Below are positions 6,575 through 24,322 of a stretch of 64,000 nt of DNA, in pieces. The translations under genes were made by a program, and so were the position numbers. The stretch is from positions 124,001-188,000 of the IMG/VR virus record IMGVR_UViG_3300032245_001860; one strand, given 5' to 3'. The notes under the pieces are model-generated. The model did not search any database and was not told the origin of the DNA. It was given only the letters and a program-made list of their open reading frames with translations. Positions within the stretch are counted from its first letter, which is position 1. The number at the start of each line of letters is the position of its first letter.

Positions 6575-8917
6575 ATGGCAACAAGAAACTCATTGGCATC
6601 AGCAATCAGAACATCAGCATATTCTGTCACTGGTGAATCTGCAAAAGGGTCTGGATTCAATCAAGATCGAAACTATGCAAACAGTAGAATAAATCCTGGT
6701 TTGGGACCGAGTGTCAGACAGGCTCAGTCTATGAACACTGTAACCACTTCTCCAAACTTTTATTCTCCGTTCCTTACCCCTTCATCATTTCAAATCCCAA
6801 ATGCACGAAGAGAAGTTTATCTTTGGGCTAACTGGTGGGTAAATAATGAGCCGAAAGTTGCTGCAGCCATTAACTTCTACACAAACTTTCCATTTTCAGG
6901 TTGGGAATTAGAATGTTCTTCTACATATGTAAAAGACTATTTTGAAAAACTTGTTGAAAAGTTAAACTTCCAAAAATGGCTTCCTCAAATTGCGCACACC
7001 TATTATCTTTTAGGTGATTCTTTTGTTCTTTTATCAATTGAATGCGAGCACTGTAATGGTAGCGGTTGGAATGAAAAGAAGAACGAAGACTGTACTCATG
7101 ATGGTGCGTCTTGGAAATCTATTTCTATCTTAAATCCTGACAGTGTGTTAAAAACCCCAGGAATGCTTGATCAAGAAGGCACTTATGTTTACAGACCAAG
7201 TGCAGAAGAAATTAGAGTTGTCAATGAAAGACAACCTAAAGAAATTTATGACTCAATTCCTGATAGTGTAAAAAGAATGATTTTGAAGGGTGATCCAATC
7301 AAGCTCAATCCTTTATCGATTCACCACTTTAAGCATGGATCAAATCCTTGGGAAGATTATGGAACGTCATTGATCAGACCATTATTTCCTATTCTCACAT
7401 ATAAGGATAAATTGCGTCAAGCTCAGTTTATGATTGCTGATAGATTAATTCTTCCTATCAAAGTTGTCAAAATTGGTTCTGATACTCGCCCAGCATCACA
7501 AGAAGATATTGATGGCGTACAAGATGAACTTGCTGCACTTGCTTCTGATCCTAACCTGACCCTCGTAACCCACCATAACTTTGACCTTGAATGGTATGGT
7601 GCAAATAGTAAGTTCTATGTTGTTACTCCAGAATTTGAAGAAATTAATTCAGAACTTTTAGATGGCTTGATGCTTTCTAAGGCTTTACTTAATGGTGAAG
7701 GACCAACTTATGGAAATGCACAAGTTGGCCTTATGGCAATGGCTCAAAGATTAGAGACATTCAGAAGAGAAGTAGCTCACTGGATTGAATTGAAAATATT
7801 TAGACCAGTTGCTGAGTGGAATGGATTTGTTGTTGAGGGAGAAAGAGGACAAGAAGAGATTATCTACCCAACAATAAAGTTTAATGATTTGCAACTAAGA
7901 GATGATTCGCAAAAACTTCAGATTATGGCTACTGCAAATCAACAAGGTGTTATTTCAAACACTTCGCTAATTGAAGCTTTTGGACTTGATGTTGACCAAG
8001 AAATTGAAAGACTAAGATTTGAACAAGGCGCAAGTTTTATGAAAGAAGGAAACTTTGGTGTTCCAAGTTTCTCTATGAACTTGCAATCAGGACCCGTCAC
8101 TGGGCAGGGTTTTGCAGGTCAACAAGCAGCTCCAGGCGCAGCTCCTCCTGGTGGAATGATGGGTGGAATGCCTGGGATGGAAGCTGGTGGAATGACACCC
8201 CCTATTGCATCATCAAAAGAAGAAAACTATCGTTTAGCATCTATTGTTATTAATCAACTTTACAATGACGCATTAGAAACAAAGAAAGAGCTTTATGGCA
8301 AAAGATATGCCTCAAAAACAATAAAGTCTGCTGCGCATGAAGGATTTATCCAATCAATTATGCCTGTCACTGGTAGAGGTATCCATGGTCCACTTCCTGA
8401 GAAATATGAAGGATTCAATAAAACATTAAGTCCTGAAATTCTTGGTGGTAGTCTTTGCTCTCCATTAAATATTGAAGCTAAATTCGAATATAGACTTGCA
8501 ATGAGTTCAAATGATGAAAATGTAAGAACAGCTTTCAAGCAAAAACAAGAAATGAATCAGCCAAGCTTATATACATCTATTGAAAAGAAACTTTATGGAT
8601 TGTTACTTTCATTAAACATGCCTTATTCTTTATTTGCTCAATACTCTGCAGGACCAACAGGTGATTACACTTTGGATGCAGCTATTCCACAATTGGGCAT
8701 TGGAATAGAAGCTGACGGAGAAATCTGGCATAATAATTTTGACAAGATTGCTAAAGATAAAAAAAGAGATAGTGAATTAGCAAACAATGGATGGATTATC
8801 TTAAGGTTCACAGACAAAGAATTAAATGATCATCCAAATGATGTCTTGAATGTAATTATGCAAGGTATTAGAAAAAGAACAGGACAATCTAATAGCCCAG
8901 AAGAACAAACATTATAA
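6575..8917 (+). CDS. Portal protein with a C-terminal DUF559/Vsr-like endonuclease domain
   Basis: Portal-like segments (EPKVAAAINFYTNFPF, IHHFKH...YGTSLIRP, LSKALLNGEGPTYGNAQV, RREVAHWIELKIFRPVAEWNGF) and position before protease/scaffold/MCP. C-terminus: SIEKKL...AQY...YTLDAAIP..GIGIEADGEIWH...DKKRD..L..NGWIILRF. Confidence 0.85.
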   Translation: MATRNSLASAIRTSAYSVTGESAKGSGFNQDRNYANSRINPGLGPSVRQAQSMNTVTTSPNFYSPFLTPSSFQIPNARREVYLWANWWVNNEPKVAAAINFYTNFPFSGWELECSSTYVKDYFEKLVEKLNFQKWLPQIAHTYYLLGDSFVLLSIECEHCNGSGWNEKKNEDCTHDGASWKSISILNPDSVLKTPGMLDQEGTYVYRPSAEEIRVVNERQPKEIYDSIPDSVKRMILKGDPIKLNPLSIHHFKHGSNPWEDYGTSLIRPLFPILTYKDKLRQAQFMIADRLILPIKVVKIGSDTRPASQEDIDGVQDELAALASDPNLTLVTHHNFDLEWYGANSKFYVVTPEFEEINSELLDGLMLSKALLNGEGPTYGNAQVGLMAMAQRLETFRREVAHWIELKIFRPVAEWNGFVVEGERGQEEIIYPTIKFNDLQLRDDSQKLQIMATANQQGVISNTSLIEAFGLDVDQEIERLRFEQGASFMKEGNFGVPSFSMNLQSGPVTGQGFAGQQAAPGAAPPGGMMGGMPGMEAGGMTPPIASSKEENYRLASIVINQLYNDALETKKELYGKRYASKTIKSAAHEGFIQSIMPVTGRGIHGPLPEKYEGFNKTLSPEILGGSLCSPLNIEAKFEYRLAMSSNDENVRTAFKQKQEMNQPSLYTSIEKKLYGLLLSLNMPYSLFAQYSAGPTGDYTLDAAIPQLGIGIEADGEIWHNNFDKIAKDKKRDSELANNGWIILRFTDKELNDHPNDVLNVIMQGIRKRTGQSNSPEEQTL

Positions 8918-18077: not shown

Positions 18078-18400
18078 TTATAGATAATATTTCTAACATG
18101 TTCAGAGGCTGGTTCATTGGAAACTTTGAACCAGCTATTTTCAAATCTAAAGATTTTGAAGTTGGAATTCTTTTTCATCCTAAAGGCGAAAAATGGCCTA
18201 AACATTATCATAAAGAAGCAGTAGAAGTTAATGTTTTAATGTCTGGTAGAATGACAATTAATGGAAAACTATTATCATCTGGTAATATATTTCTTATTGA
18301 AAAAAATGAAATTGCTGATCCTGAGTTTTTAGAAGATTGTACAATTGTATGTGTAAAAACTCCATCTATTCCTGGAGATAAATATGAGGTCAAAGAATGA
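18074..18400 (+). CDS. Cupin-domain protein
   Basis: GWFIGNFEP, KHYHKEAVE.NVLMSG cupin metal motif; ATGA overlaps at both ends. Confidence 0.8.
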   Translation: MIIDNISNMFRGWFIGNFEPAIFKSKDFEVGILFHPKGEKWPKHYHKEAVEVNVLMSGRMTINGKLLSSGNIFLIEKNEIADPEFLEDCTIVCVKTPSIPGDKYEVKE

Positions 18401-19572
18401 TTTTTGTAGATGAAATTGATTCGAATAAATACATCAAAGGTTTTTATTATTTAGAGTCTTCAAAAGGTGTTAGAGATGCAGCATGGAATCTTGCTATTGG
18501 ACAGAGTGTTGGAAATCCATTAGTTAGATTGGAAAGAGAAACAGATGAACTTTTTGCAAATCATTCTTGCGTAGTAAAAAACTGCCCTGATTTAGATGCA
18601 AACTCTGGACGTGTAGAAATTGGTTTCCCAGTATCTAATATTGATTTCGCATCTGACGGTATTTCCCAGTTGCTTTGTTTTCTTATGGGTGGACAATTAG
18701 ATATTGATACCATTGAAACATGCTGGCTTGAAAAGCTAATTATTCCTGACTGGGTAATTGAAAAATATTTCAAAATGCCAAAATTTGGTATCACTGGGGC
18801 AAGAGAGTATACCAAGTCATATGACAAGCCTTTATTAGGCGGTATTTGCAAACCAAAAACTGGAATTAGCCCTGATATTCTTTTAGATATGGTCAAAGAA
18901 ATGGTTGATGGTGGAGTTAATTTTATCAAAGAAGATGAAATTATGGCCAATCCTGAATGCTGTTTGCTTGAAGAAAGAGTTTCTCTTATCTCAGATTACA
19001 TCAGAGATAAGAATGTGGTTTATTGTTTCTGTATTAATTCTGATCCAGCACATATTTTAGAGAGAGTCAAGTTTGTTCATCAAGAAGGTGGAAATGGCAT
19101 CCATATCAATTTCTGGTCTGGCATGGGTGTTTACAAGTCAGTAAGAGAATTGGACTTGCCATTGTTTATGCACTTTCAAAAAAGTGGTGACAAGATTCTT
19201 ACAAATAAAAAGCATGCGTTCCATATTGATTGGAGTGTAATTTGTTATCTTGCTGGACTTATGGGTGTTGACTTCATTCATACTGGAATGTGGGGTGGAT
19301 ATGCAAGTGATGATGAAAATGACCTGAGAAATACTATGAGTATTTTGAATGCAAGAAATGTAGTGCCAGCATTGTCATGTGGCATGCATCCTGGAATCGT
19401 AAACACCATTACTGAAAAGTTTGGCATCAACTATCTTGCAAATTGTGGGGGAGCATTACATGGACACCCAAAAGGAACTGTTGCAGGAGCCAAAGCAATG
19501 AGGCAAGCTATCGACAAAACTTACGGTGAAGAATATTTTCAAGCTATAAATAAATGGGGCCTTGTTCAATAA
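18397..19572 (+). CDS. RuBisCO-like protein (form IV RLP)
   Basis: LLGGICKPKTG, GGVNFIKEDE, DFIHTG, PALSCGMHPG, GGALHGHPKGTVAGAKAMRQA; several carboxylase residues substituted. Confidence 0.9.
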   Translation: MIFVDEIDSNKYIKGFYYLESSKGVRDAAWNLAIGQSVGNPLVRLERETDELFANHSCVVKNCPDLDANSGRVEIGFPVSNIDFASDGISQLLCFLMGGQLDIDTIETCWLEKLIIPDWVIEKYFKMPKFGITGAREYTKSYDKPLLGGICKPKTGISPDILLDMVKEMVDGGVNFIKEDEIMANPECCLLEERVSLISDYIRDKNVVYCFCINSDPAHILERVKFVHQEGGNGIHINFWSGMGVYKSVRELDLPLFMHFQKSGDKILTNKKHAFHIDWSVICYLAGLMGVDFIHTGMWGGYASDDENDLRNTMSILNARNVVPALSCGMHPGIVNTITEKFGINYLANCGGALHGHPKGTVAGAKAMRQAIDKTYGEEYFQAINKWGLVQ

Positions 19573-19575
19573 AGC

Positions 19576-20940
19576 ATGCTAAAGCTTGTTGTTTTTGATT
19601 TAGATGGAGTTTTAGTTGAAGCAAAAGAAATTCATTTTGATGCTTTAAATTCTGCATTGAAAAATGTTGATGAAAAATATGTCATATCTTGGGAAGAACA
19701 TCTCAGAACATATGATGGCTTGAAAACATATGACAAACTAAAACTCTTATCTGAATATAAGGGTTTACCACTTGATAAGAGCATTCAAGAAAAAATATTT
19801 AATGATAAACAAATTTTCACAACAAGAGCACTTAATGATCTTCAAAAAAATCAAAAACTAATCGATATTTTTACCAAGTTAAAAGAAGAAAATTTCAAAA
19901 TAGCTTGTTGTTCAAATTCTGTAAAAAATACAGTGGATTTAGTTCTTGATAAGCTTGGCATTGATAAGTTTTTTGACTTAAAATTATCAAATGCAAATGT
20001 AAAATTTGCTAAACCTCATCCAGAAATCTATTGGAAAGCAATGTCTTATTTTGGAGCATTACCTGAAGAAACATTGATTATTGAAGATTCTCCTACTGGG
20101 TTAACTTCAGCATATAAATCTGGAGCTAAAGTATTAAGAGTAAAAGATCCTAATGATTATGATTTTGATAAAATACTTTCATCTTGCAATTCTGTAAAAC
20201 AAAATATTGAAAAATGGGCTGATCAAAAAATGAATGTAATTATTCCAATGGCTGGTCATGGCAGTAGATTTTCTCAAGCTGGATATACATTTCCCAAACC
20301 CTTAATAGAAGTACATGGTAAACCTATGATTCAAGTTGTTATAGATAACTTGAAAGTAGATGCTCATTTTATTTTCATTGTTCAAAAAGAACATAGAGAA
20401 AAATATAATCTTGATTCTATGCTTTCTTTATTAGCTCCAGGTTGCGATATTGTAGATGTAGATAAAGTAACAGAAGGAGCTGCTTGCACTGTATTATTAG
20501 GTAAAGAATTTATCAATAATGACAATCCTCTGGTAATAGCTAATTCAGATCAATTTGTAGAATGGAGTAGTTTAGATTTCTTTTACAAAATGAACGAACA
20601 AAACTTAGATGGTGGTATTGTTTCTTTTAAATCAACACATCCCAAATGGTCTTATGCAAAGGTAGATAGTCAGGGGTTTATTTTAGAAGTAGCTGAAAAG
20701 AAAACTATTTCTGATATTGCTACAGTAGGAATTTATTACTGGAAAAAAGGATCTGATTTTGTCAAGTATGCAGAACAAATGATTGATAAAAATATCAGAG
20801 TAAATAATGAGTTTTATGTATGTCCTGTTTATAATGAAGCTATTTTAGATGGACTTAAGTTTAAAACATTTGATGTGCCAAAAATGTGGGGGCTTGGCAC
20901 ACCTGAAGATTTAGATTATTACTTGGAAATGAATAAATGA
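19576..20940 (+). CDS. HAD-family phosphatase fused to a nucleotidyltransferase
   Basis: N-terminus FDLDGVL, CSNS, KPHPEIY, IEDSPTG (beta-PGM/CbbY-type HAD). C-terminus MNVIIPMAGHGSRF..PKPLI, IANSDQ, WGLGTPEDL. Confidence 0.88.
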   Translation: MLKLVVFDLDGVLVEAKEIHFDALNSALKNVDEKYVISWEEHLRTYDGLKTYDKLKLLSEYKGLPLDKSIQEKIFNDKQIFTTRALNDLQKNQKLIDIFTKLKEENFKIACCSNSVKNTVDLVLDKLGIDKFFDLKLSNANVKFAKPHPEIYWKAMSYFGALPEETLIIEDSPTGLTSAYKSGAKVLRVKDPNDYDFDKILSSCNSVKQNIEKWADQKMNVIIPMAGHGSRFSQAGYTFPKPLIEVHGKPMIQVVIDNLKVDAHFIFIVQKEHREKYNLDSMLSLLAPGCDIVDVDKVTEGAACTVLLGKEFINNDNPLVIANSDQFVEWSSLDFFYKMNEQNLDGGIVSFKSTHPKWSYAKVDSQGFILEVAEKKTISDIATVGIYYWKKGSDFVKYAEQMIDKNIRVNNEFYVCPVYNEAILDGLKFKTFDVPKMWGLGTPEDLDYYLEMNK

Positions 20941-21809
20941 AAAGACTAACTGCTATTTACTGGGTCAAGAATGAAGCAAGATATATTCCTGAGTGGATAG
21001 AATTTCACTTGATGCAAGGATTTGAACATTTTATACTTTATGATAACAATTCTACTGATGGAAGTCAAGAAATACTACGACCATATATTGATGCTGAAAT
21101 TTTGGAATTAAGATCATATCCAGCAGAAATGAAACAGAGATGTCTAAATAGGCCTTTAGGGGCAAAAAACTATTGGGTGGCTGAAACATGTATGCTTGAA
21201 CAAAGAAAGAAGTCAGACTGGCTTCATTTTCATGCTGTAGATGAATTTACATACTGCCCAGATGGTACAGACTTGAAAGATTTTCTTACAGAGTTTGATA
21301 AGTATGGTGGGCTTTCAGTTTGTTGGCAATGTTATAACTCAAATGGACATATAAATAGACCTGAAGGACTTGTAATTGAAAACTACAATGTGAGAGTCCC
21401 AGATCCAATGTGTCATGTTAAAACATTCCTTAAGGTTGGTCGTGCTAAGCAAACTTGTGGATCTTTGCACAATTGGGAATATATTGGAAACTATCAATCA
21501 GTCAATGAAAATCATAAACCTGTAGTGGGATCATTTTGTCCAGATGATTTTTCCTTCAATAGAATAAGAAATCATCACTATGTAACTATGTCTCGTGAAG
21601 AATTTGATATCAAGACAAATAAAGGTATTTTAGATTCAGCTTGGGCAGAAAACAGAAGAAGGCATAATTATGATTATCAATTTGATGATTACAATAATAG
21701 AGAACATATCTTCGATGATATTCTAAAACCTTGGGTACCTAAAGTAAAAGAAGCTATTATGAAAAGGTATCACACTAATAAAGATTTTTTACCTTTAATA
21801 AATCATTAA
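20937..21809 (+). CDS. Glycosyltransferase (GT-A fold, GT92/GT2-like)
   Basis: VKNEARYIPEWIEFH...GFEHFILYDNNSTDG, VDEF, INHY-like NHHYVTMSREEF. Confidence 0.75.
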   Translation: MKRLTAIYWVKNEARYIPEWIEFHLMQGFEHFILYDNNSTDGSQEILRPYIDAEILELRSYPAEMKQRCLNRPLGAKNYWVAETCMLEQRKKSDWLHFHAVDEFTYCPDGTDLKDFLTEFDKYGGLSVCWQCYNSNGHINRPEGLVIENYNVRVPDPMCHVKTFLKVGRAKQTCGSLHNWEYIGNYQSVNENHKPVVGSFCPDDFSFNRIRNHHYVTMSREEFDIKTNKGILDSAWAENRRRHNYDYQFDDYNNREHIFDDILKPWVPKVKEAIMKRYHTNKDFLPLINH

Positions 21810-21810
21810 A

Positions 21811-21840
21811 TATAAACCCATCGAAATCGATGGGTTTATA
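21811..21840. terminator. Bidirectional terminator between convergent genes
   Basis: TATAAACCCATCG-AAAT-CGATGGGTTTATA; includes the kinase stop codon. Confidence 0.8.
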
Positions 21841-22816
21841 TTTTTGCGACAGAAGCTCCATCAAAATCAAATTTAAAATTGAAAGGCTTGTTATTGTAAA
21901 ACTTTTGTTTGATTTTATTCTGAGCATATGAATCAGCAAAAAGCATCATAAAGCCCCCACCACCAGCTCCTAATATTTTTCCTCCCTTAGCTCCACAAAG
22001 CTTAGCTTCTTCATACATTTCATTGATTTCTAAATTAGAAATATCATCTGACACTTCTTTTTTAAGTTGCCAAGAATAATCAAGCATTTCACCAAAGTGT
22101 GTTAGATCTTTTTTAATTAAGTTAATTTTAAATTGTTGAGCTAATTCAACCATGGTTTTTATATTCTGAAAACTTTTATCATTATCAATCATTCTTTTGC
22201 TTTGATTTTTAAGAATGTCGTCAGCAGATCTACCTTTACTTGTATGCAGCAATATGAGGTTATTTTCAAGATATTCTATAGTATCTTCATCTAAAGTTAT
22301 TGTATTAGTTGAGACACCTCTATCAGCAAATTCATGAACATTGAATCCACCATAAGAACAAGCGTATTGGTCTTGTTTTCCAATAGGCTTTTTACATAAA
22401 TTAATTTCTATGATACAGGCTAACTCTGCCAATGAACCTTTACTTAGTATCTCTTCTGAATATTTATAATTTTCTATTGCTTTGATTAATCCAACAGCGA
22501 AAGCACTTGAAGCACCCATTCCTGTTCCATTGGAGGGTAAGTCGGAAATAGAGGCTATTTCGATACCATTTGTAATATCAAAATACTTCAAGGTATGTTT
22601 TACGATGTCATGCTTTAAGTCATCTAAATTATTGACATTTTCTGTAATAGAATAGCTCAATCTAATGGAATCATCAAACTTTTTATTCAATGATATATAT
22701 AAATACTTATTTATAGAAGCAGAAACGACCATTCCAGGGCTTTGGTTGTAAAAAGAAGATAAATCAGAACCGCCCCCAAAAAAACTTATTCTAAATGGAG
22801 TTTTACTTACTATCAT
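21836..22816 (-). CDS. hddA: GHMP-family sugar kinase, D-glycero-alpha-D-manno-heptose-7-phosphate kinase-like (start MIVSK at 22816)
   Basis: TPFRISFFGGGSD, DLPSNGTGMGASSAF, IGKQDQY, KILGAGGGGF. Confidence 0.75.
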   Translation of the reverse strand: MIVSKTPFRISFFGGGSDLSSFYNQSPGMVVSASINKYLYISLNKKFDDSIRLSYSITENVNNLDDLKHDIVKHTLKYFDITNGIEIASISDLPSNGTGMGASSAFAVGLIKAIENYKYSEEILSKGSLAELACIIEINLCKKPIGKQDQYACSYGGFNVHEFADRGVSTNTITLDEDTIEYLENNLILLHTSKGRSADDILKNQSKRMIDNDKSFQNIKTMVELAQQFKINLIKKDLTHFGEMLDYSWQLKKEVSDDISNLEINEMYEEAKLCGAKGGKILGAGGGGFMMLFADSYAQNKIKQKFYNNKPFNFKFDFDGASVAKI

Positions 22817-22841
22817 ATGACTATTGTACAATTAGCATATG
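22814..22841. promoter_or_regulatory. Palindromic bidirectional leaderless promoter
   Basis: CAT-ATGACT-ATTGTACAAT-TAGCAT-ATG: the palindromic core gives a TACAAT -10 box on each strand, each 6 nt from an ATG. Confidence 0.65.
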
Positions 22842-23651
22842 AGAAACGCAATTATTACATACGCTCAAGGTAATGACTTTGTAGAAACATTAGATTCTGA
22901 AATTTTCTTAAAAAATCTTAACAAACATAAAACATTTAGGAAATATTGTTTTACAAAAGACCTCAATCAAAAGAACTTAGATATGTTGAGTAAATATTTT
23001 GATGAAGTTTTTGTTTGCTCAAATCCTATTTACAATAGTGCAAGAGATAGATTTATGTCTTATTACTTATGGATGATTGATAATTATAAAAATTTTGACA
23101 AAATTATGCATTTGGATTTTCGAGATATAGTTATTCAAAAAGATCCATTTGAGTTTATGAATAATCATTGGGACAAAGATATTTTTGTAGTGTCTGAAGG
23201 TATGAAAATTAAAGACAACTATTGGAATAAAATGGATATGACTTATTTCAATAACACTCAAATCCAATTTCATAAAGATGATTTTTCAGATTATTATGTT
23301 ATTAACGGTGGGACTATTGGCGGTAATATTTTTCCTCTTTCGCAATTATTTTTGATGCTTTGGGTCAACAGCAATAGAAACAGTCAATCAAATACTGACC
23401 AAGCTACATTAAATTACTTATATCCTTACCTCAAAGCTAACCCAAAAGTTATGGTATGCCATCCTCTTGAAGACAATTTTTGTGCTACTGGAGAGGGAAT
23501 TAAGTATGGTAATGTGCCAGTAAAATACAATGACACTCAAGTTGCAGATCAAAATTATGAAAACTATTATATTTTTCATCAGTGGGATAGAACAGAAGTT
23601 GCAGATAAAATTAGACAAAAACAAAAGGAATCTTTGTCTTTTGTGATTTAG
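22839..23651 (+). CDS. Putative glycosyltransferase (GT-A-like)
   Basis: RDRF..Y, IMHLDFRDIVIQKDPF (DxxD), INGGTIGG, DQATLNYL, HQWDR. Confidence 0.6.
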   Translation: MRNAIITYAQGNDFVETLDSEIFLKNLNKHKTFRKYCFTKDLNQKNLDMLSKYFDEVFVCSNPIYNSARDRFMSYYLWMIDNYKNFDKIMHLDFRDIVIQKDPFEFMNNHWDKDIFVVSEGMKIKDNYWNKMDMTYFNNTQIQFHKDDFSDYYVINGGTIGGNIFPLSQLFLMLWVNSNRNSQSNTDQATLNYLYPYLKANPKVMVCHPLEDNFCATGEGIKYGNVPVKYNDTQVADQNYENYYIFHQWDRTEVADKIRQKQKESLSFVI

Positions 23652-23686: not shown

Positions 23687-24322
23687 ATGTGGTACAAAAA
23701 AGCATTTATTCAATCAGAATTTTGGAACGAAGAGAAAACTAACGACCCAAAATCTTTGAAGGATGCTTTTTTTGGCGTCATAACAGATTCTAAAACAAGA
23801 ACCAATGATCCATATAAGATTTTTGGCAATCTAAAAACTTACAAAAACAAAGTACTTAATGAATCTCCAGAAATGACACAAGAAATAGAACAATCTTTCA
23901 ATGATGCTGTAGATTCATTAAAATCAGAATTTCCAGACTTTAATGAAAGCTCTAATAATGCTTCTGGTAATTGGCTTGAAATAGCTGAAAGTTATCTTGG
24001 CACTCCATATAAATTTGGTGGAGATGATGAAAGAGGTATTGATTGCTCAGCTTTCATTCAAAAAGTATTTCCAGATTTACCAAGAACTGCGAACGAACAA
24101 ATGAAAGTTGGTTCTGATGTCCCTATTGATGATATTTCTCAATGGCAGCCGGGAGATAGAATTTATTTTGATATGAATGCAAGATTAAGATCTGGAGACG
24201 CAGACCATACTGGTATTTATTTGGGAAATAATGAATTTATTCAAGCTTCATCAAGCAAAGGTGTAGTAAAGACACCTATCAATAATTTCTATGAACAAAA
24301 AATCATTGCTGTAAAGAGATAA
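23687..24322 (+). CDS. NlpC/P60 cell-wall endopeptidase with an MWYKKA leader
   Basis: YLGTPYKFGG, GIDCSAF (Cys), LPRTANEQ, PGDRIYF, HTGIYLG (His), FIQASS. Confidence 0.88.
   Translation: MWYKKAFIQSEFWNEEKTNDPKSLKDAFFGVITDSKTRTNDPYKIFGNLKTYKNKVLNESPEMTQEIEQSFNDAVDSLKSEFPDFNESSNNASGNWLEIAESYLGTPYKFGGDDERGIDCSAFIQKVFPDLPRTANEQMKVGSDVPIDDISQWQPGDRIYFDMNARLRSGDADHTGIYLGNNEFIQASSSKGVVKTPINNFYEQKIIAVKR

What the first reader, a model, noticed from the sequence alone, without database searches (positions are those of the whole stretch)
22814..22841. A 28-bp near-palindrome acts as a two-way leaderless promoter
Seen: CATATGACTATTGTACAATTAGCATATG. The two divergent start codons are 22 nt apart, and the perfect core ATTGTACAAT gives TACAAT on both strands, each exactly 6 nt from its ATG. 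A TTGCGT -35 lies 17 nt upstream on the minus strand. Inference: one -10 palindrome drives both the kinase and the GT, with mutually exclusive polymerase binding or a shared dimeric regulator site.
Basis: partly seen in the sequence, partly recalled or inferred. Interest (0 to 1): 0.6.

Follow-up and report, generated by a model that had tools for sequence, protein, structure and literature searches.

The report
Two-way leaderless promoter in a jumbo phage
A 10-base palindrome (ATTGTACAAT) in the 22-base gap between two back-to-back genes of a 316-kb freshwater phage most likely acts as one shared promoter, starting both messages at their start codons; it is a tidy, conserved example of two known mechanisms combined, not a new kind of element.

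Summary
The sequence is as described: CATATGACTATTGTACAATTAGCATATG at 22814-22841, with TACAAT on both strands, each 6 nt from an ATG. Both start codons are confirmed by homologues. The window lies in a 315,852-bp IMG/VR virus record, a jumbo phage from freshwater with two sigma factors and no detected RNA polymerase gene.

The functional unit is the 10-bp core plus its spacing, not the 28-bp near-palindrome. ATTGTACAA is invariant in the five related lineages that keep the kinase/glycosyltransferase pair (59-91% protein identity). The flanking spacers and the CATATG ends diverge.

Genome-wide, G-TA(C/T)AA(T) sits 6-7 nt before about 30 credible start codons, including DnaK and DnaJ, and is rare at other spacings. 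It carries no -35 signal. The same box precedes two tRNA units, so it is a transcription signal.

The predicted start sites are 23 bp apart, a spacing already described for symmetric bidirectional promoters.

No RNA data exist, so transcription starts are inferred. The proposed TTGCGT -35 is weak and is confounded by coding sequence. A dimeric regulator is neither needed nor excluded.

Verdict: real, a new member of a known kind, of moderate interest.

The parts
22823..22832 (.). Composite palindromic -10 core ATTGTACAAT, made of two TACAAT hexamers on opposite strands that share their TA
   Evidence: sequence. ATTGTACAA is invariant in L007, L009, L010, L011 and in L045/L046. Only the last base varies, T to A in L009.
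22827..22832 (+). Plus-strand -10 hexamer TACAAT (G at -13), 6 nt before ATG 22839
   Evidence: It belongs to the GTAYAA(T)-N6/7-ATG class. The 6-nt spacing is kept in all relatives.
22823..22828 (-). Minus-strand -10 hexamer TACAAT (G at -13), 6 nt before ATG 22816
   Evidence: Spacing is 6 nt in L007, L009 and L011, 8 nt in L010 and 9 nt in L045/L046.
22839..22839 (+). Predicted plus-strand transcription start, the A of the ATG (inferred, not measured)
   Evidence: It lies 7 nt downstream of the last base of the hexamer. No RNA run is available.
22816..22816 (-). Predicted minus-strand transcription start, the A of the ATG (inferred, not measured), 23 bp from the plus-strand one
   Evidence: Geometry. 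A 23-bp separation is one of the favoured spacings for symmetric bidirectional promoters.
22839..23651 (+). 270-aa GT-A-fold (retaining-type) glycosyltransferase-like protein with no Pfam or NCBIfam family
   Evidence: There are 67 homologues, mostly 266-273 aa, and the N-terminus M(R/N/K)N is conserved. The AF2 model has pLDDT 89.9. Foldseek finds GT6/GT8 enzymes at E about 5e-8, TM about 0.55.
21836..22816 (-). 326-aa GHMP-family sugar kinase, HddA-like but below the equivalog cut-off
   Evidence: Pfam GHMP_kinases_N and _C. NF049969 scores 157.7 bits against a cut-off of 600, and its alignment begins at residue 6 of the TTG-started ORF, which is the Met at 22816. Gene callers give 326 aa in relatives.
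21808..21843 (-). Terminator-like hairpin with a T-rich tail at the kinase stop codon; it probably ends the kinase transcript
   Evidence: 16-pair stem with 5 GC pairs.
22846..22851 (-).
   Evidence: One search shows the 17-nt spacer. It is a 3/6 match to TTGACA and was not picked up. The class logo has no -35 signal.

Best explanation
The 22-bp gap between the divergent kinase and glycosyltransferase genes holds a single compact bidirectional promoter. Two -10 hexamers (TACAAT, each preceded by G) lie on opposite strands and overlap by their first two bases, giving the palindrome ATTGTACAAT. A sigma-70-family RNA polymerase holoenzyme can engage it in either orientation without a -35 element. 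Transcription would start about 7 nt downstream of the hexamer, at the A of each ATG (22839 on plus, 22816 on minus). Both mRNAs would therefore be leaderless, or carry at most 1-3 nt, and be translated without a Shine-Dalgarno site. Which holoenzyme reads the box is not established; the host primary sigma is the more likely candidate. The two hexamers overlap and the predicted starts are only 23 bp apart, so the two orientations of polymerase binding must exclude each other. The element is one instance of a promoter class (G-TAYAA-T, no -35) used for roughly a tenth of this phage's genes and for its tRNA units. Shown here: the sequence, the start codons, conservation, and genome-wide positional enrichment. 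Inferred: the transcription starts, leaderless translation, the identity of the polymerase and sigma, and mutual exclusion.
For: Geometry: each TACAAT is exactly 6 nt from its ATG and neither gene has an SD, although the average gene in this genome has G-rich SD signal at -13..-8. Start codons: the HddA profile begins at Met 22816, callers give 326 aa in relatives, and the upstream TTG is out of frame in L010. GT homologues are mostly 266-273 aa with aligned N-termini. Phylogenetic footprint: in every lineage that keeps the divergent pair, ATTGTACAA is invariant and the GT-side 6-nt spacing is kept. These lineages are L007/8 (91% protein identity), L009 (76%), L010 (76%), L011/12 (70%) and L045/46 (59-60%). 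Spacer letters and the CATATG ends change freely. GT orthologues in other contexts still carry GTATAA(T)-N6-ATG, after a terminator in L047 and after a co-directional epimerase in L014, L048-53 and L054. Genome-wide: GTAYAA lies 7 nt (17 cases) or 8 nt (13 cases) before long-ORF ATGs, against 0-3 at other spacings. About 30 of the 40 class members have no more than one upstream in-frame ATG and only short open sequence upstream. The class includes DnaJ and DnaK, whose Pfam profiles begin at residues 3-4. Transcriptional nature: tgGTATAAT lies 7 and 9 nt before the mature 5' ends of the tRNA-Leu/Lys and tRNA-Ser units. The box also occurs 20-35 nt upstream of SD-led genes. GTATAAT is 3.6-fold enriched in non-coding DNA (23 found, 6.4 expected). 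Polymerase: no RNAP beta or T7-type RNAP gene was found, and there are two phage sigma-70-family genes. Literature: symmetric -10 elements give bidirectional promoters, with 23 bp among the favoured TSS separations. A Pribnow box 6-8 nt from the start codon is the accepted signature of leaderless transcription. A -10 motif alone next to an ORF drives leaderless genes in Deinococcus experimentally.
Against: There is no transcript evidence. All 14 public runs holding this DNA are metagenomic DNA, none RNA, and the contigs laid on the locus cannot show 5' ends. The host is unknown, so its ability to translate leaderless mRNA and to use -35-less promoters is assumed. The kinase-side spacing is 8 nt in L010 and 9 nt in L045/46, so that transcript may carry a 1-3 nt leader there. 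T at -7 is only preferred in the class (26 of 40) and is A in L009. That is looser than canonical sigma-70 recognition and may mean a non-standard sigma. The two phage sigmas have regions 2 and 4, which would normally imply a -35 partner that is not seen. Enrichment of the N7 pattern in four related phage records is modest without ORF filtering.
Confidence: 0.72

Rival explanations
1. The palindrome TTGTACAA/ATTGTACAAT is mainly an operator for a dimeric phage or host regulator that controls both genes. Its resemblance to a -10 box is secondary, or it overlaps a promoter.
For: It is a perfect 10-bp inverted repeat conserved across lineages. TTGTACAA occurs 10 times in the genome, 6 of them non-coding, although only 9.4% of the genome is non-coding.
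Against: Most members of the positional class carry the non-palindromic GTATAA(T) (28 of 40 have T at -10). At the other TGTACAA sites the flanking bases break the longer palindrome, and the motif is oriented and spaced relative to one ATG only. Conservation of a fixed distance to the start codon fits a promoter, not an operator. No regulator gene is linked to the locus.
Confidence: 0.1
2. Both genes are translated from leadered transcripts that start further upstream, inside the opposite gene. The conserved box is then an RNA-level signal, such as an A/U-rich non-SD ribosome-loading or processing site at a fixed distance from the AUG.
For: The motif is tied to start codons at a fixed distance, which is also how ribosome-binding sites behave. 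No TSS data exist. In several relatives the box lies inside the 3' end of a co-directional upstream gene.
Against: The same box precedes tRNA genes, which are not translated. It also occurs at variable distances upstream of genes that have their own SD. Its consensus is the sigma-70 -10 consensus, and its distance to the ATG equals the normal -10-to-TSS distance. An RNA signal would not need to be symmetric on both strands.
Confidence: 0.1
3. The palindrome acts through a hairpin or cruciform formed by the 28-bp near-palindrome, for example as a terminator, processing site or structural DNA element.
For: RNA folds of the 44-nt region give -8.2 and -7.3 kcal/mol, with z-scores of -2.4 and -1.4 against shuffles.
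Against: The stem rests on the TCATATG arms, which are not conserved. In L009, L011 and L045 the arms no longer pair beyond the CAT/ATG bases forced by the start codons. The conserved core would sit in the loop. There is no T-tract.
Confidence: 0.03
4. Chance: an AT-rich 22-bp gap between two start codons happens to contain a -10-like palindrome that has no function.
For: The genome is 33% G+C, TAnnnT-like strings are common, and a second ATTGTACAAT in the window is plainly coding.
Against: The core stays invariant at 59-91% protein identity while the neighbouring spacer bases change. The genome-wide spike at 6-7 nt has p of about 1e-10.
Confidence: 0.03

Closest known systems
Symmetric bidirectional promoters of bacteria (Warman, Forrest, Wade & Grainger; bioRxiv 10.1101/2020.01.31.928960; follow-up NAR 2026, PMC12825309)
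   Same: Divergent transcription comes from -10 elements that coincide on opposite strands because of the element's own symmetry. Divergent start sites 23 bp apart are one of the favoured configurations listed (18 bp is the commonest; also 29, 23, 12, 10 and 7). One polymerase binding event excludes the other.
   Different: Here both predicted starts coincide with start codons, so the whole 22-bp intergenic region is promoter and nothing else. The hexamers overlap only by their TA. There is no -35 on either side. The host is unknown and no TSS has been measured.
The '-10 region adjacent to ORF' mode of leaderless gene expression (Deinococcus-Thermus, PMC12340547; GeneMarkS-2 group C genomes such as Actinobacteria, PMC6028130)
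   Same: A TANNNT/Pribnow box lies 6-8 nt from the start codon, usually without a -35, and is enough to start leaderless mRNAs. It coexists with SD-led genes in the same genome.
   Different: This is a 33% G+C freshwater jumbo phage, not a cellular genome of those phyla. The box has a strong G at -13 and a near-consensus TA(C/T)AAT. About 10% of genes use it, rather than 25-60%.
Phage lambda PRM/cI, and Thermus phage phiYS40 middle/late genes (from my own knowledge; the phiYS40 paper, J Mol Biol 366:420, could not be opened)
   Same: These are phage genes expressed as leaderless mRNAs by host RNA polymerase. As I recall, phiYS40 middle/late promoters lack a -35 and give leaderless transcripts. 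Lambda PRM is one of a divergent promoter pair.
   Different: Lambda PR and PRM are separate promoters tens of bp apart and are controlled by operators, and only cI is leaderless. No shared palindromic -10 is involved in either system.
phiKZ-type jumbo phage transcription
   Same: A jumbo phage with its own promoter classes.
   Different: phiKZ uses phage multisubunit RNA polymerases, and dRNA-seq found no leaderless transcript among 65 viral TSSs. This phage has no detectable RNAP gene, carries two sigma-family genes and shows a large leaderless-type class.

Membership tests
Sigma-70-type promoter | -10 hexamer of type TAnnnT (consensus TATAAT) | tested here: met
   TACAAT is on both strands. 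The class consensus is G-TA(C/T)AA-T.
Sigma-70-type promoter | -35 hexamer at 16-18 nt, or an extended -10 TGn | tested here: not met
   The minus strand has TTGCGT at 17 nt, but it is a 3/6 match and coding. The plus strand has none. The site was not reported by the two-hexamer scan. The class logo has no information at -35 or -15/-14. This does not exclude -10-only promoters, which are known in several phyla.
Sigma-70-type promoter | Transcription starts 6-9 nt downstream of the hexamer | not testable with these tools
   No RNA run holds this DNA. The contigs laid cannot show 5' ends.
Leaderless mRNA | AUG start codon with no Shine-Dalgarno sequence, and a promoter box 6-8 nt upstream of the start codon | tested here: met
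   The criterion is as used by GeneMarkS-2.
Leaderless mRNA | The mRNA 5' end lies at, or within a few nt of, the start codon | not testable with these tools
   No transcript data.
Symmetric bidirectional promoter (Warman et al.) | -10 elements on opposite strands overlap or base-pair at key positions, with divergent TSSs 7-29 bp apart | tested here: met
   T-12/A-11 of one hexamer pair with A-11/T-12 of the other. The predicted TSSs, 22816 and 22839, are 23 bp apart. The TSS positions themselves are inferred.
Symmetric bidirectional promoter (Warman et al.) | Mutation of the shared element lowers transcription in both directions | not testable with these tools
   This needs reporter assays or in vitro transcription.
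Palindromic operator of a dimeric regulator | The inverted repeat recurs as a palindrome at several regulated sites, with a cognate regulator | tested here: not met
   Recurring sites are mostly the asymmetric GTATAA(T). At the other TGTACAA sites the palindrome does not extend, and the sites are oriented to one ATG. No regulator was identified.
D-glycero-D-manno-heptose 7-phosphate kinase HddA (NCBIfam NF049969) | Score above the curated equivalog cut-off | tested here: not met
   157.7 bits against a cut-off of 600. It is a GHMP kinase by Pfam. The sugar substrate is unknown.
GT-A fold glycosyltransferase | GT-A Rossmann-like fold with a DxD-type acidic motif | tested here: met
   The model has pLDDT 89.9. 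Top PDB matches are GT6/GT8 retaining transferases at E about 5e-8 and TM 0.5-0.56. D93, R95 and D96 (DFRD) are invariant in 49 homologues. No sequence family matches, and activity is untested.

The most novel reading that the evidence does not exclude
A clade of uncultured freshwater jumbo phages expresses a sizeable non-structural regulon as leaderless transcripts from -35-less G-TAYAA-T boxes that abut the ORFs. The regulon includes chaperones DnaK and DnaJ, a ClpX-like ATPase, a UvsW-like helicase, sugar-modification enzymes and tRNA units. Within this system a 10-bp palindrome is the minimal complete control region for two genes at once. This would imply a host, or a phage-modified polymerase and ribosome, specialised for -10-only initiation and leaderless translation outside the phyla where that is known to be common.
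Probability: 0.45. Interest if true: 0.55.

Novelty: new member of a known kind. Interest (0 to 1): 0.45.

Why it matters
If the start sites are confirmed, this would be about the smallest complete two-gene control region known to me: 22 bp, with no leaders, no ribosome-binding sites and one shared 10-bp element, kept intact across phage lineages down to 59% protein identity. It would extend the bidirectional-promoter concept to a fully leaderless pair. It would also mark a group of uncultured jumbo phages as heavy users of leaderless expression, in contrast to phiKZ, where none was found. In practice the G-TAYAA-T-N6/7-ATG rule corrects gene starts in these phages. Examples are the kinase at 22816 rather than the TTG at 22831, the second ATG in L010, and the pair at genome 56267/56302. 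The rule also offers a compact bidirectional part for synthetic biology once a host is known.

Tried and rejected
1. Close relatives among annotated phages: blastn of 4 kb and tblastn of the GT found nothing. DnaK tblastn hits were host-like sequences in phage records and gave no host information.

2. Single-protein word searches of IMG/VR for both proteins found nothing, and the exact palindrome pattern found nothing. The alignment-based search succeeded, returning 33 loci.

3. Transcript evidence: none of the 14 runs is RNA. Laying four freshwater DNA runs showed relatives at 80-95% identity bridging the junction. Only the best-supported differences are listed, so conservation could not be read from that table.

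4. Host inference failed. The PurA-like gene's nearest genome hits are scattered MAGs (Woesearchaeota, Bdellovibrionota and others) at 35-43% identity.

5. A Z-genome (PurZ) idea was rejected. The 331-aa PurA-like protein scores 283 bits to PurA and 125 bits to PurZ, whose cut-off is 300. It matches solved PurA structures far better than PurZ structures.

6. The hairpin or terminator reading of the 28-mer was rejected because the arms are not conserved.

7. The second ATTGTACAAT, at 18336, was rejected as a promoter because it lies inside a 108-aa ORF.

8. The TTG at 22831 was rejected as the kinase start because it is out of frame in L010 and lies upstream of where the profile alignment begins.

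9. phiKZ-like or T7-like phage RNA polymerases were not found. The T7-family control search matched no control genome, so that negative is weak.

10. Pattern counts in four related phage records showed only about a two-fold excess of N7 over N11 spacing without ORF filtering.

11. The phiYS40 paper could not be opened.

Full report
**What is in the sequence.** One search shows CATATGACTATTGTACAATTAGCATATG at exactly 22814-22841.
- The minus-strand ORF can begin at TTG 22831 or at ATG 22816. The plus-strand ORF begins at ATG 22839.
- With the ATGs, the gap is 22 nt (22817-22838).
- Its centre is the perfect palindrome ATTGTACAAT (22823-22832). This reads TACAAT on both strands, each followed by 6 nt and then ATG.
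- The two hexamers share their first two bases (TA, 22827-22828).
It matches TTGACA at only 3 of 6 positions and lies inside the glycosyltransferase codons. The two-hexamer scan did not report it.

**Where the window comes from.** The window is bases 124001-188000 of a 315,852-bp IMG/VR virus record estimated 88% complete.
- It is 33% G+C and tightly packed with ORFs.
- It has a PHROG hit to a head-maturation protease region, four tRNAs and a clamp-loader subunit.
- It encodes DnaK, DnaJ, a ClpX-like ATPase and a UvsW-like helicase.
- No RNA polymerase beta-type or T7-type gene was detected. The T7 control search matched no control genome, so that negative is weak.
- Two sigma-70-family genes with regions 2 and 4 are present.
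- It is therefore a jumbo phage of a bacterium that depends on host core polymerase.
- DNA close to it is found only in freshwater and aquatic metagenomes, and no RNA run holds it.
- No annotated phage is close.

**The two genes.**
- The minus gene is a GHMP-family sugar kinase (Pfam N and C domains). It is HddA-like but far below the equivalog cut-off (157.7 bits against 600). The profile alignment begins at the Met encoded at 22816.
- Gene callers on related contigs give 326 aa, which is the ATG start.
- In L010 the kinase-side spacer is 8 nt, which puts the TTG out of frame while the MIV(S/T)KTPFRISFFGG N-terminus is kept. The kinase therefore starts at 22816.
- The plus gene has no Pfam or NCBIfam family. 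It has 67 homologues, mostly 266-273 aa, whose N-termini align at M(R/N/K)N.
- A confident model of it (pLDDT 89.9) matches retaining GT-A glycosyltransferases of families GT6 and GT8 (E about 5e-8, TM about 0.55). DFRD is invariant. 'GT' is therefore a fair label, and 22839 is the start.
- Both genes sit in a sugar-modification island. Its members are an NTP-transferase-like protein, a methyltransferase, a RuBisCO-like protein, a HAD-phosphatase/nucleotidyltransferase fusion and a GT92.
- A terminator-like hairpin at 21808-21843 ends the kinase unit.

**Phylogenetic footprint.** Contigs carrying GT orthologues were fetched.

| Lineage | GT protein identity | Kinase-side spacer | Core | GT-side spacer |
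|---|---|---|---|---|
| window | - | atgact (6 nt) | ATTGTACAAT | tagcat (6 nt) |
| L007/L008 | 91% | same as window | ATTGTACAAT | same as window |
| L009 | 76% | attagt (6 nt) | ATTGTACAAA | ataggt (6 nt) |
| L010 | 76% | atacgttg (8 nt) | ATTGTACAAT | atgact (6 nt) |
| L011/L012 | 70% | aagctt (6 nt) | ATTGTACAAT | ttgatt (6 nt) |
| L045/L046 | 59-60% | gacacttag (9 nt) | ATTGTACAAT | acctat (6 nt) |

- ATTGTACAA is invariant wherever the kinase is the divergent neighbour, and the GT-side spacing is always 6 nt. The spacer letters and the CATATG ends are not conserved. The conserved unit is the 10-bp core and its distance to the start codons, not the 28-bp near-palindrome.
- Orthologues in different contexts keep a one-sided version, GTATAA(T)-N6-ATG. 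L047 has it after a terminator hairpin. L014, L048-53 and L054 have it after a co-directional gene, an epimerase where it was annotated (L014). More distant orthologues have SD-led starts instead.

**A genome-wide class.**
- The average gene in this genome has SD-like G enrichment at -13..-8.
- The most enriched hexamer just upstream of starts is GTATAA (22 genes against 0.8 expected). TGTACA is also enriched (8 against 0.4).
- GTAYAA lies 7 nt (17 cases) or 8 nt (13 cases) before an ATG opening an ORF of at least 60 aa, against 0-3 at every other spacing up to 38 nt.
- TA[CT]AAT gives 17 and 8 cases at 6 and 7 nt, against about 2 elsewhere.
- The aligned 40-member class shows G at -13 (31 of 40), then T-A-(T28/C12)-A-A, then T at -7 (26 of 40). 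There is no information at -35 or at the extended -10 position.
- About 30 of the 40 have at most one upstream in-frame ATG and short open sequence upstream, so they are true starts. About 8 look like chance internal sites.
- Members include DnaJ and DnaK, whose Pfam profiles start at residues 3-4 and so independently validate those starts.
- A second divergent leaderless-type pair exists at genome 56265-56304. It has two separate back-to-back boxes, and its ATGs are 35 bp apart.

**Transcription signal, not translation signal.**
- tgGTATAAT lies 7 and 9 nt before the mature 5' ends of the tRNA-Leu/Lys and tRNA-Ser units.
- The same box occurs 20-35 nt upstream of genes that have their own SD, for example at genome 12391-, 72410+ and 289108+.
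- GTATAAT is 3.6-fold enriched in non-coding DNA (23 found, 6.4 expected).
- Together with the match to the -10 consensus and the canonical -10-to-start distance, this makes a promoter the best reading. An ATG 6-7 nt downstream then makes those messages leaderless or nearly so.
- This is the signature that GeneMarkS-2 uses for leaderless transcription and that agreed with dRNA-seq data in several species.
- In Deinococcus a -10 motif alone next to an ORF was shown experimentally to drive leaderless genes without a -35.

**Bidirectionality.**
- With starts at 22816 and 22839, the divergent start sites are 23 bp apart.
- Warman et al. showed that bacterial promoters are often bidirectional because the -10 element is symmetric. 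The commonest TSS separation is 18 bp, and there are further peaks at 29, 23, 12, 10 and 7 bp where key -10 positions pair across strands.
- Here T-12/A-11 of each hexamer pair with A-11/T-12 of the other.
- Their follow-up states that one polymerase binding event prevents the other, and that competition matters only when one direction is strongly activated.
- Mutual exclusion at this site is an inference from geometry. It was not tested.

**What is not established.**
- There is no RNA evidence.
- The host is unknown.
- The sigma that reads the box is unknown. The loose T-7, the strong G-13 and the missing -35 leave two possibilities. One is a host primary sigma able to use -10-only promoters. 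The other is an unusual use of a phage sigma.
- On the kinase side, spacings of 8-9 nt in two lineages suggest a 1-3 nt leader there.
- A regulator binding the palindrome is not needed by the data but cannot be excluded.
- The modest hairpin potential of the 28-mer rests on arms that are not conserved.

**Comparison and verdict.** The element works like a symmetric bidirectional promoter of the 23-bp configuration combined with the '-10 adjacent to ORF' leaderless mode. It meets the sequence-level criteria of both. The functional criteria (mapped starts, mutational coupling) could not be tested. It does not meet the classical two-hexamer definition of a sigma-70 promoter.
- I file it as a new member of a known kind.
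- Its interest lies in its extreme compactness, its conservation, and the phage-wide leaderless class it reveals. By contrast, phiKZ dRNA-seq detected no leaderless transcript.
- Confidence in the two-way leaderless (or near-leaderless) promoter reading is about 0.7. Interest is 0.45.

Noticed in passing
G000:C1:1134-27222 (same virus record, outside the window): There are 22 copies of a palindromic hairpin, GGGGTG(A/G)T-N6-A(T/C)CACCCC, about one per 1.2 kb. All lie in the left 27 kb of the genome. This looks like a terminator or REP-like array punctuating a block of small genes.
   Followed up: no
window 23687-24322 (+), and genome 62626(-), 66166(+), 105217(-), 240331(+): Five otherwise different ORFs (156-362 aa) begin with the same N-terminus, MWYK(K/T/L/I)A (ATGTGGTACAA...). 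They include the NlpC/P60 endopeptidase just downstream of the glycosyltransferase. This may be a shared targeting or processing tag.
   Followed up: no
G000:C1:5472-5486 and 6855-6871: The tRNA-Leu/tRNA-Lys and tRNA-Ser units are preceded by tgGTATAAT, ending 7 and 9 nt before the mature 5' end. The tRNA precursors would therefore have almost no 5' leader.
   Followed up: partly
window 18397-19572 (+): A RuBisCO-like protein (391 aa) sits inside the sugar-nucleotide/glycosyltransferase island. Its best NCBIfam hits are type III RuBisCO, OiaX decarboxylase and MtnW enolase, all far below their cut-offs. An unusual sugar-phosphate chemistry in a phage glycan or DNA-modification pathway is possible.
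   Followed up: no
window 19576-20940 (+) with 21836-22816 (-): A HAD-phosphatase/nucleotidyltransferase fusion (454 aa) lies near the HddA-like kinase. Together they resemble three of the four steps of nucleotide-activated heptose synthesis: kinase, phosphatase and nucleotidyltransferase. No isomerase was identified.
   Followed up: no
G000:C1:56265-56304: This is a second divergent pair of leaderless-type starts. Two separate back-to-back boxes (GTATAAT and GTATAAA) lie 8 bp apart, and the ATGs are 35 bp apart. A longest-ORF caller makes these two genes overlap by 56 nt.
   Followed up: partly
G000:C1:111671-112666 (L005:2150-3145): A short (331 aa) adenylosuccinate-synthetase-like gene lies next to a phage sigma factor and a clamp-loader subunit. 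It scores as PurA, not PurZ. Its nearest genome hits are scattered archaeal and bacterial MAG contigs at 35-43% identity.
   Followed up: partly
G000:C1:206749-212572: The phage encodes DnaJ, a UvsW-like helicase and a full-length DnaK (Hsp70, 570 aa) in one block. Each has the leaderless-type box 6 nt before its ATG.
   Followed up: partly
L010:66-74: In this relative the gene caller started the glycosyltransferase at an ATG directly abutting TACAAT, giving 271 aa. The conserved MRNAI start is the next ATG, 6 nt further on. This shows how the box-plus-6 rule corrects start calls.
   Followed up: yes
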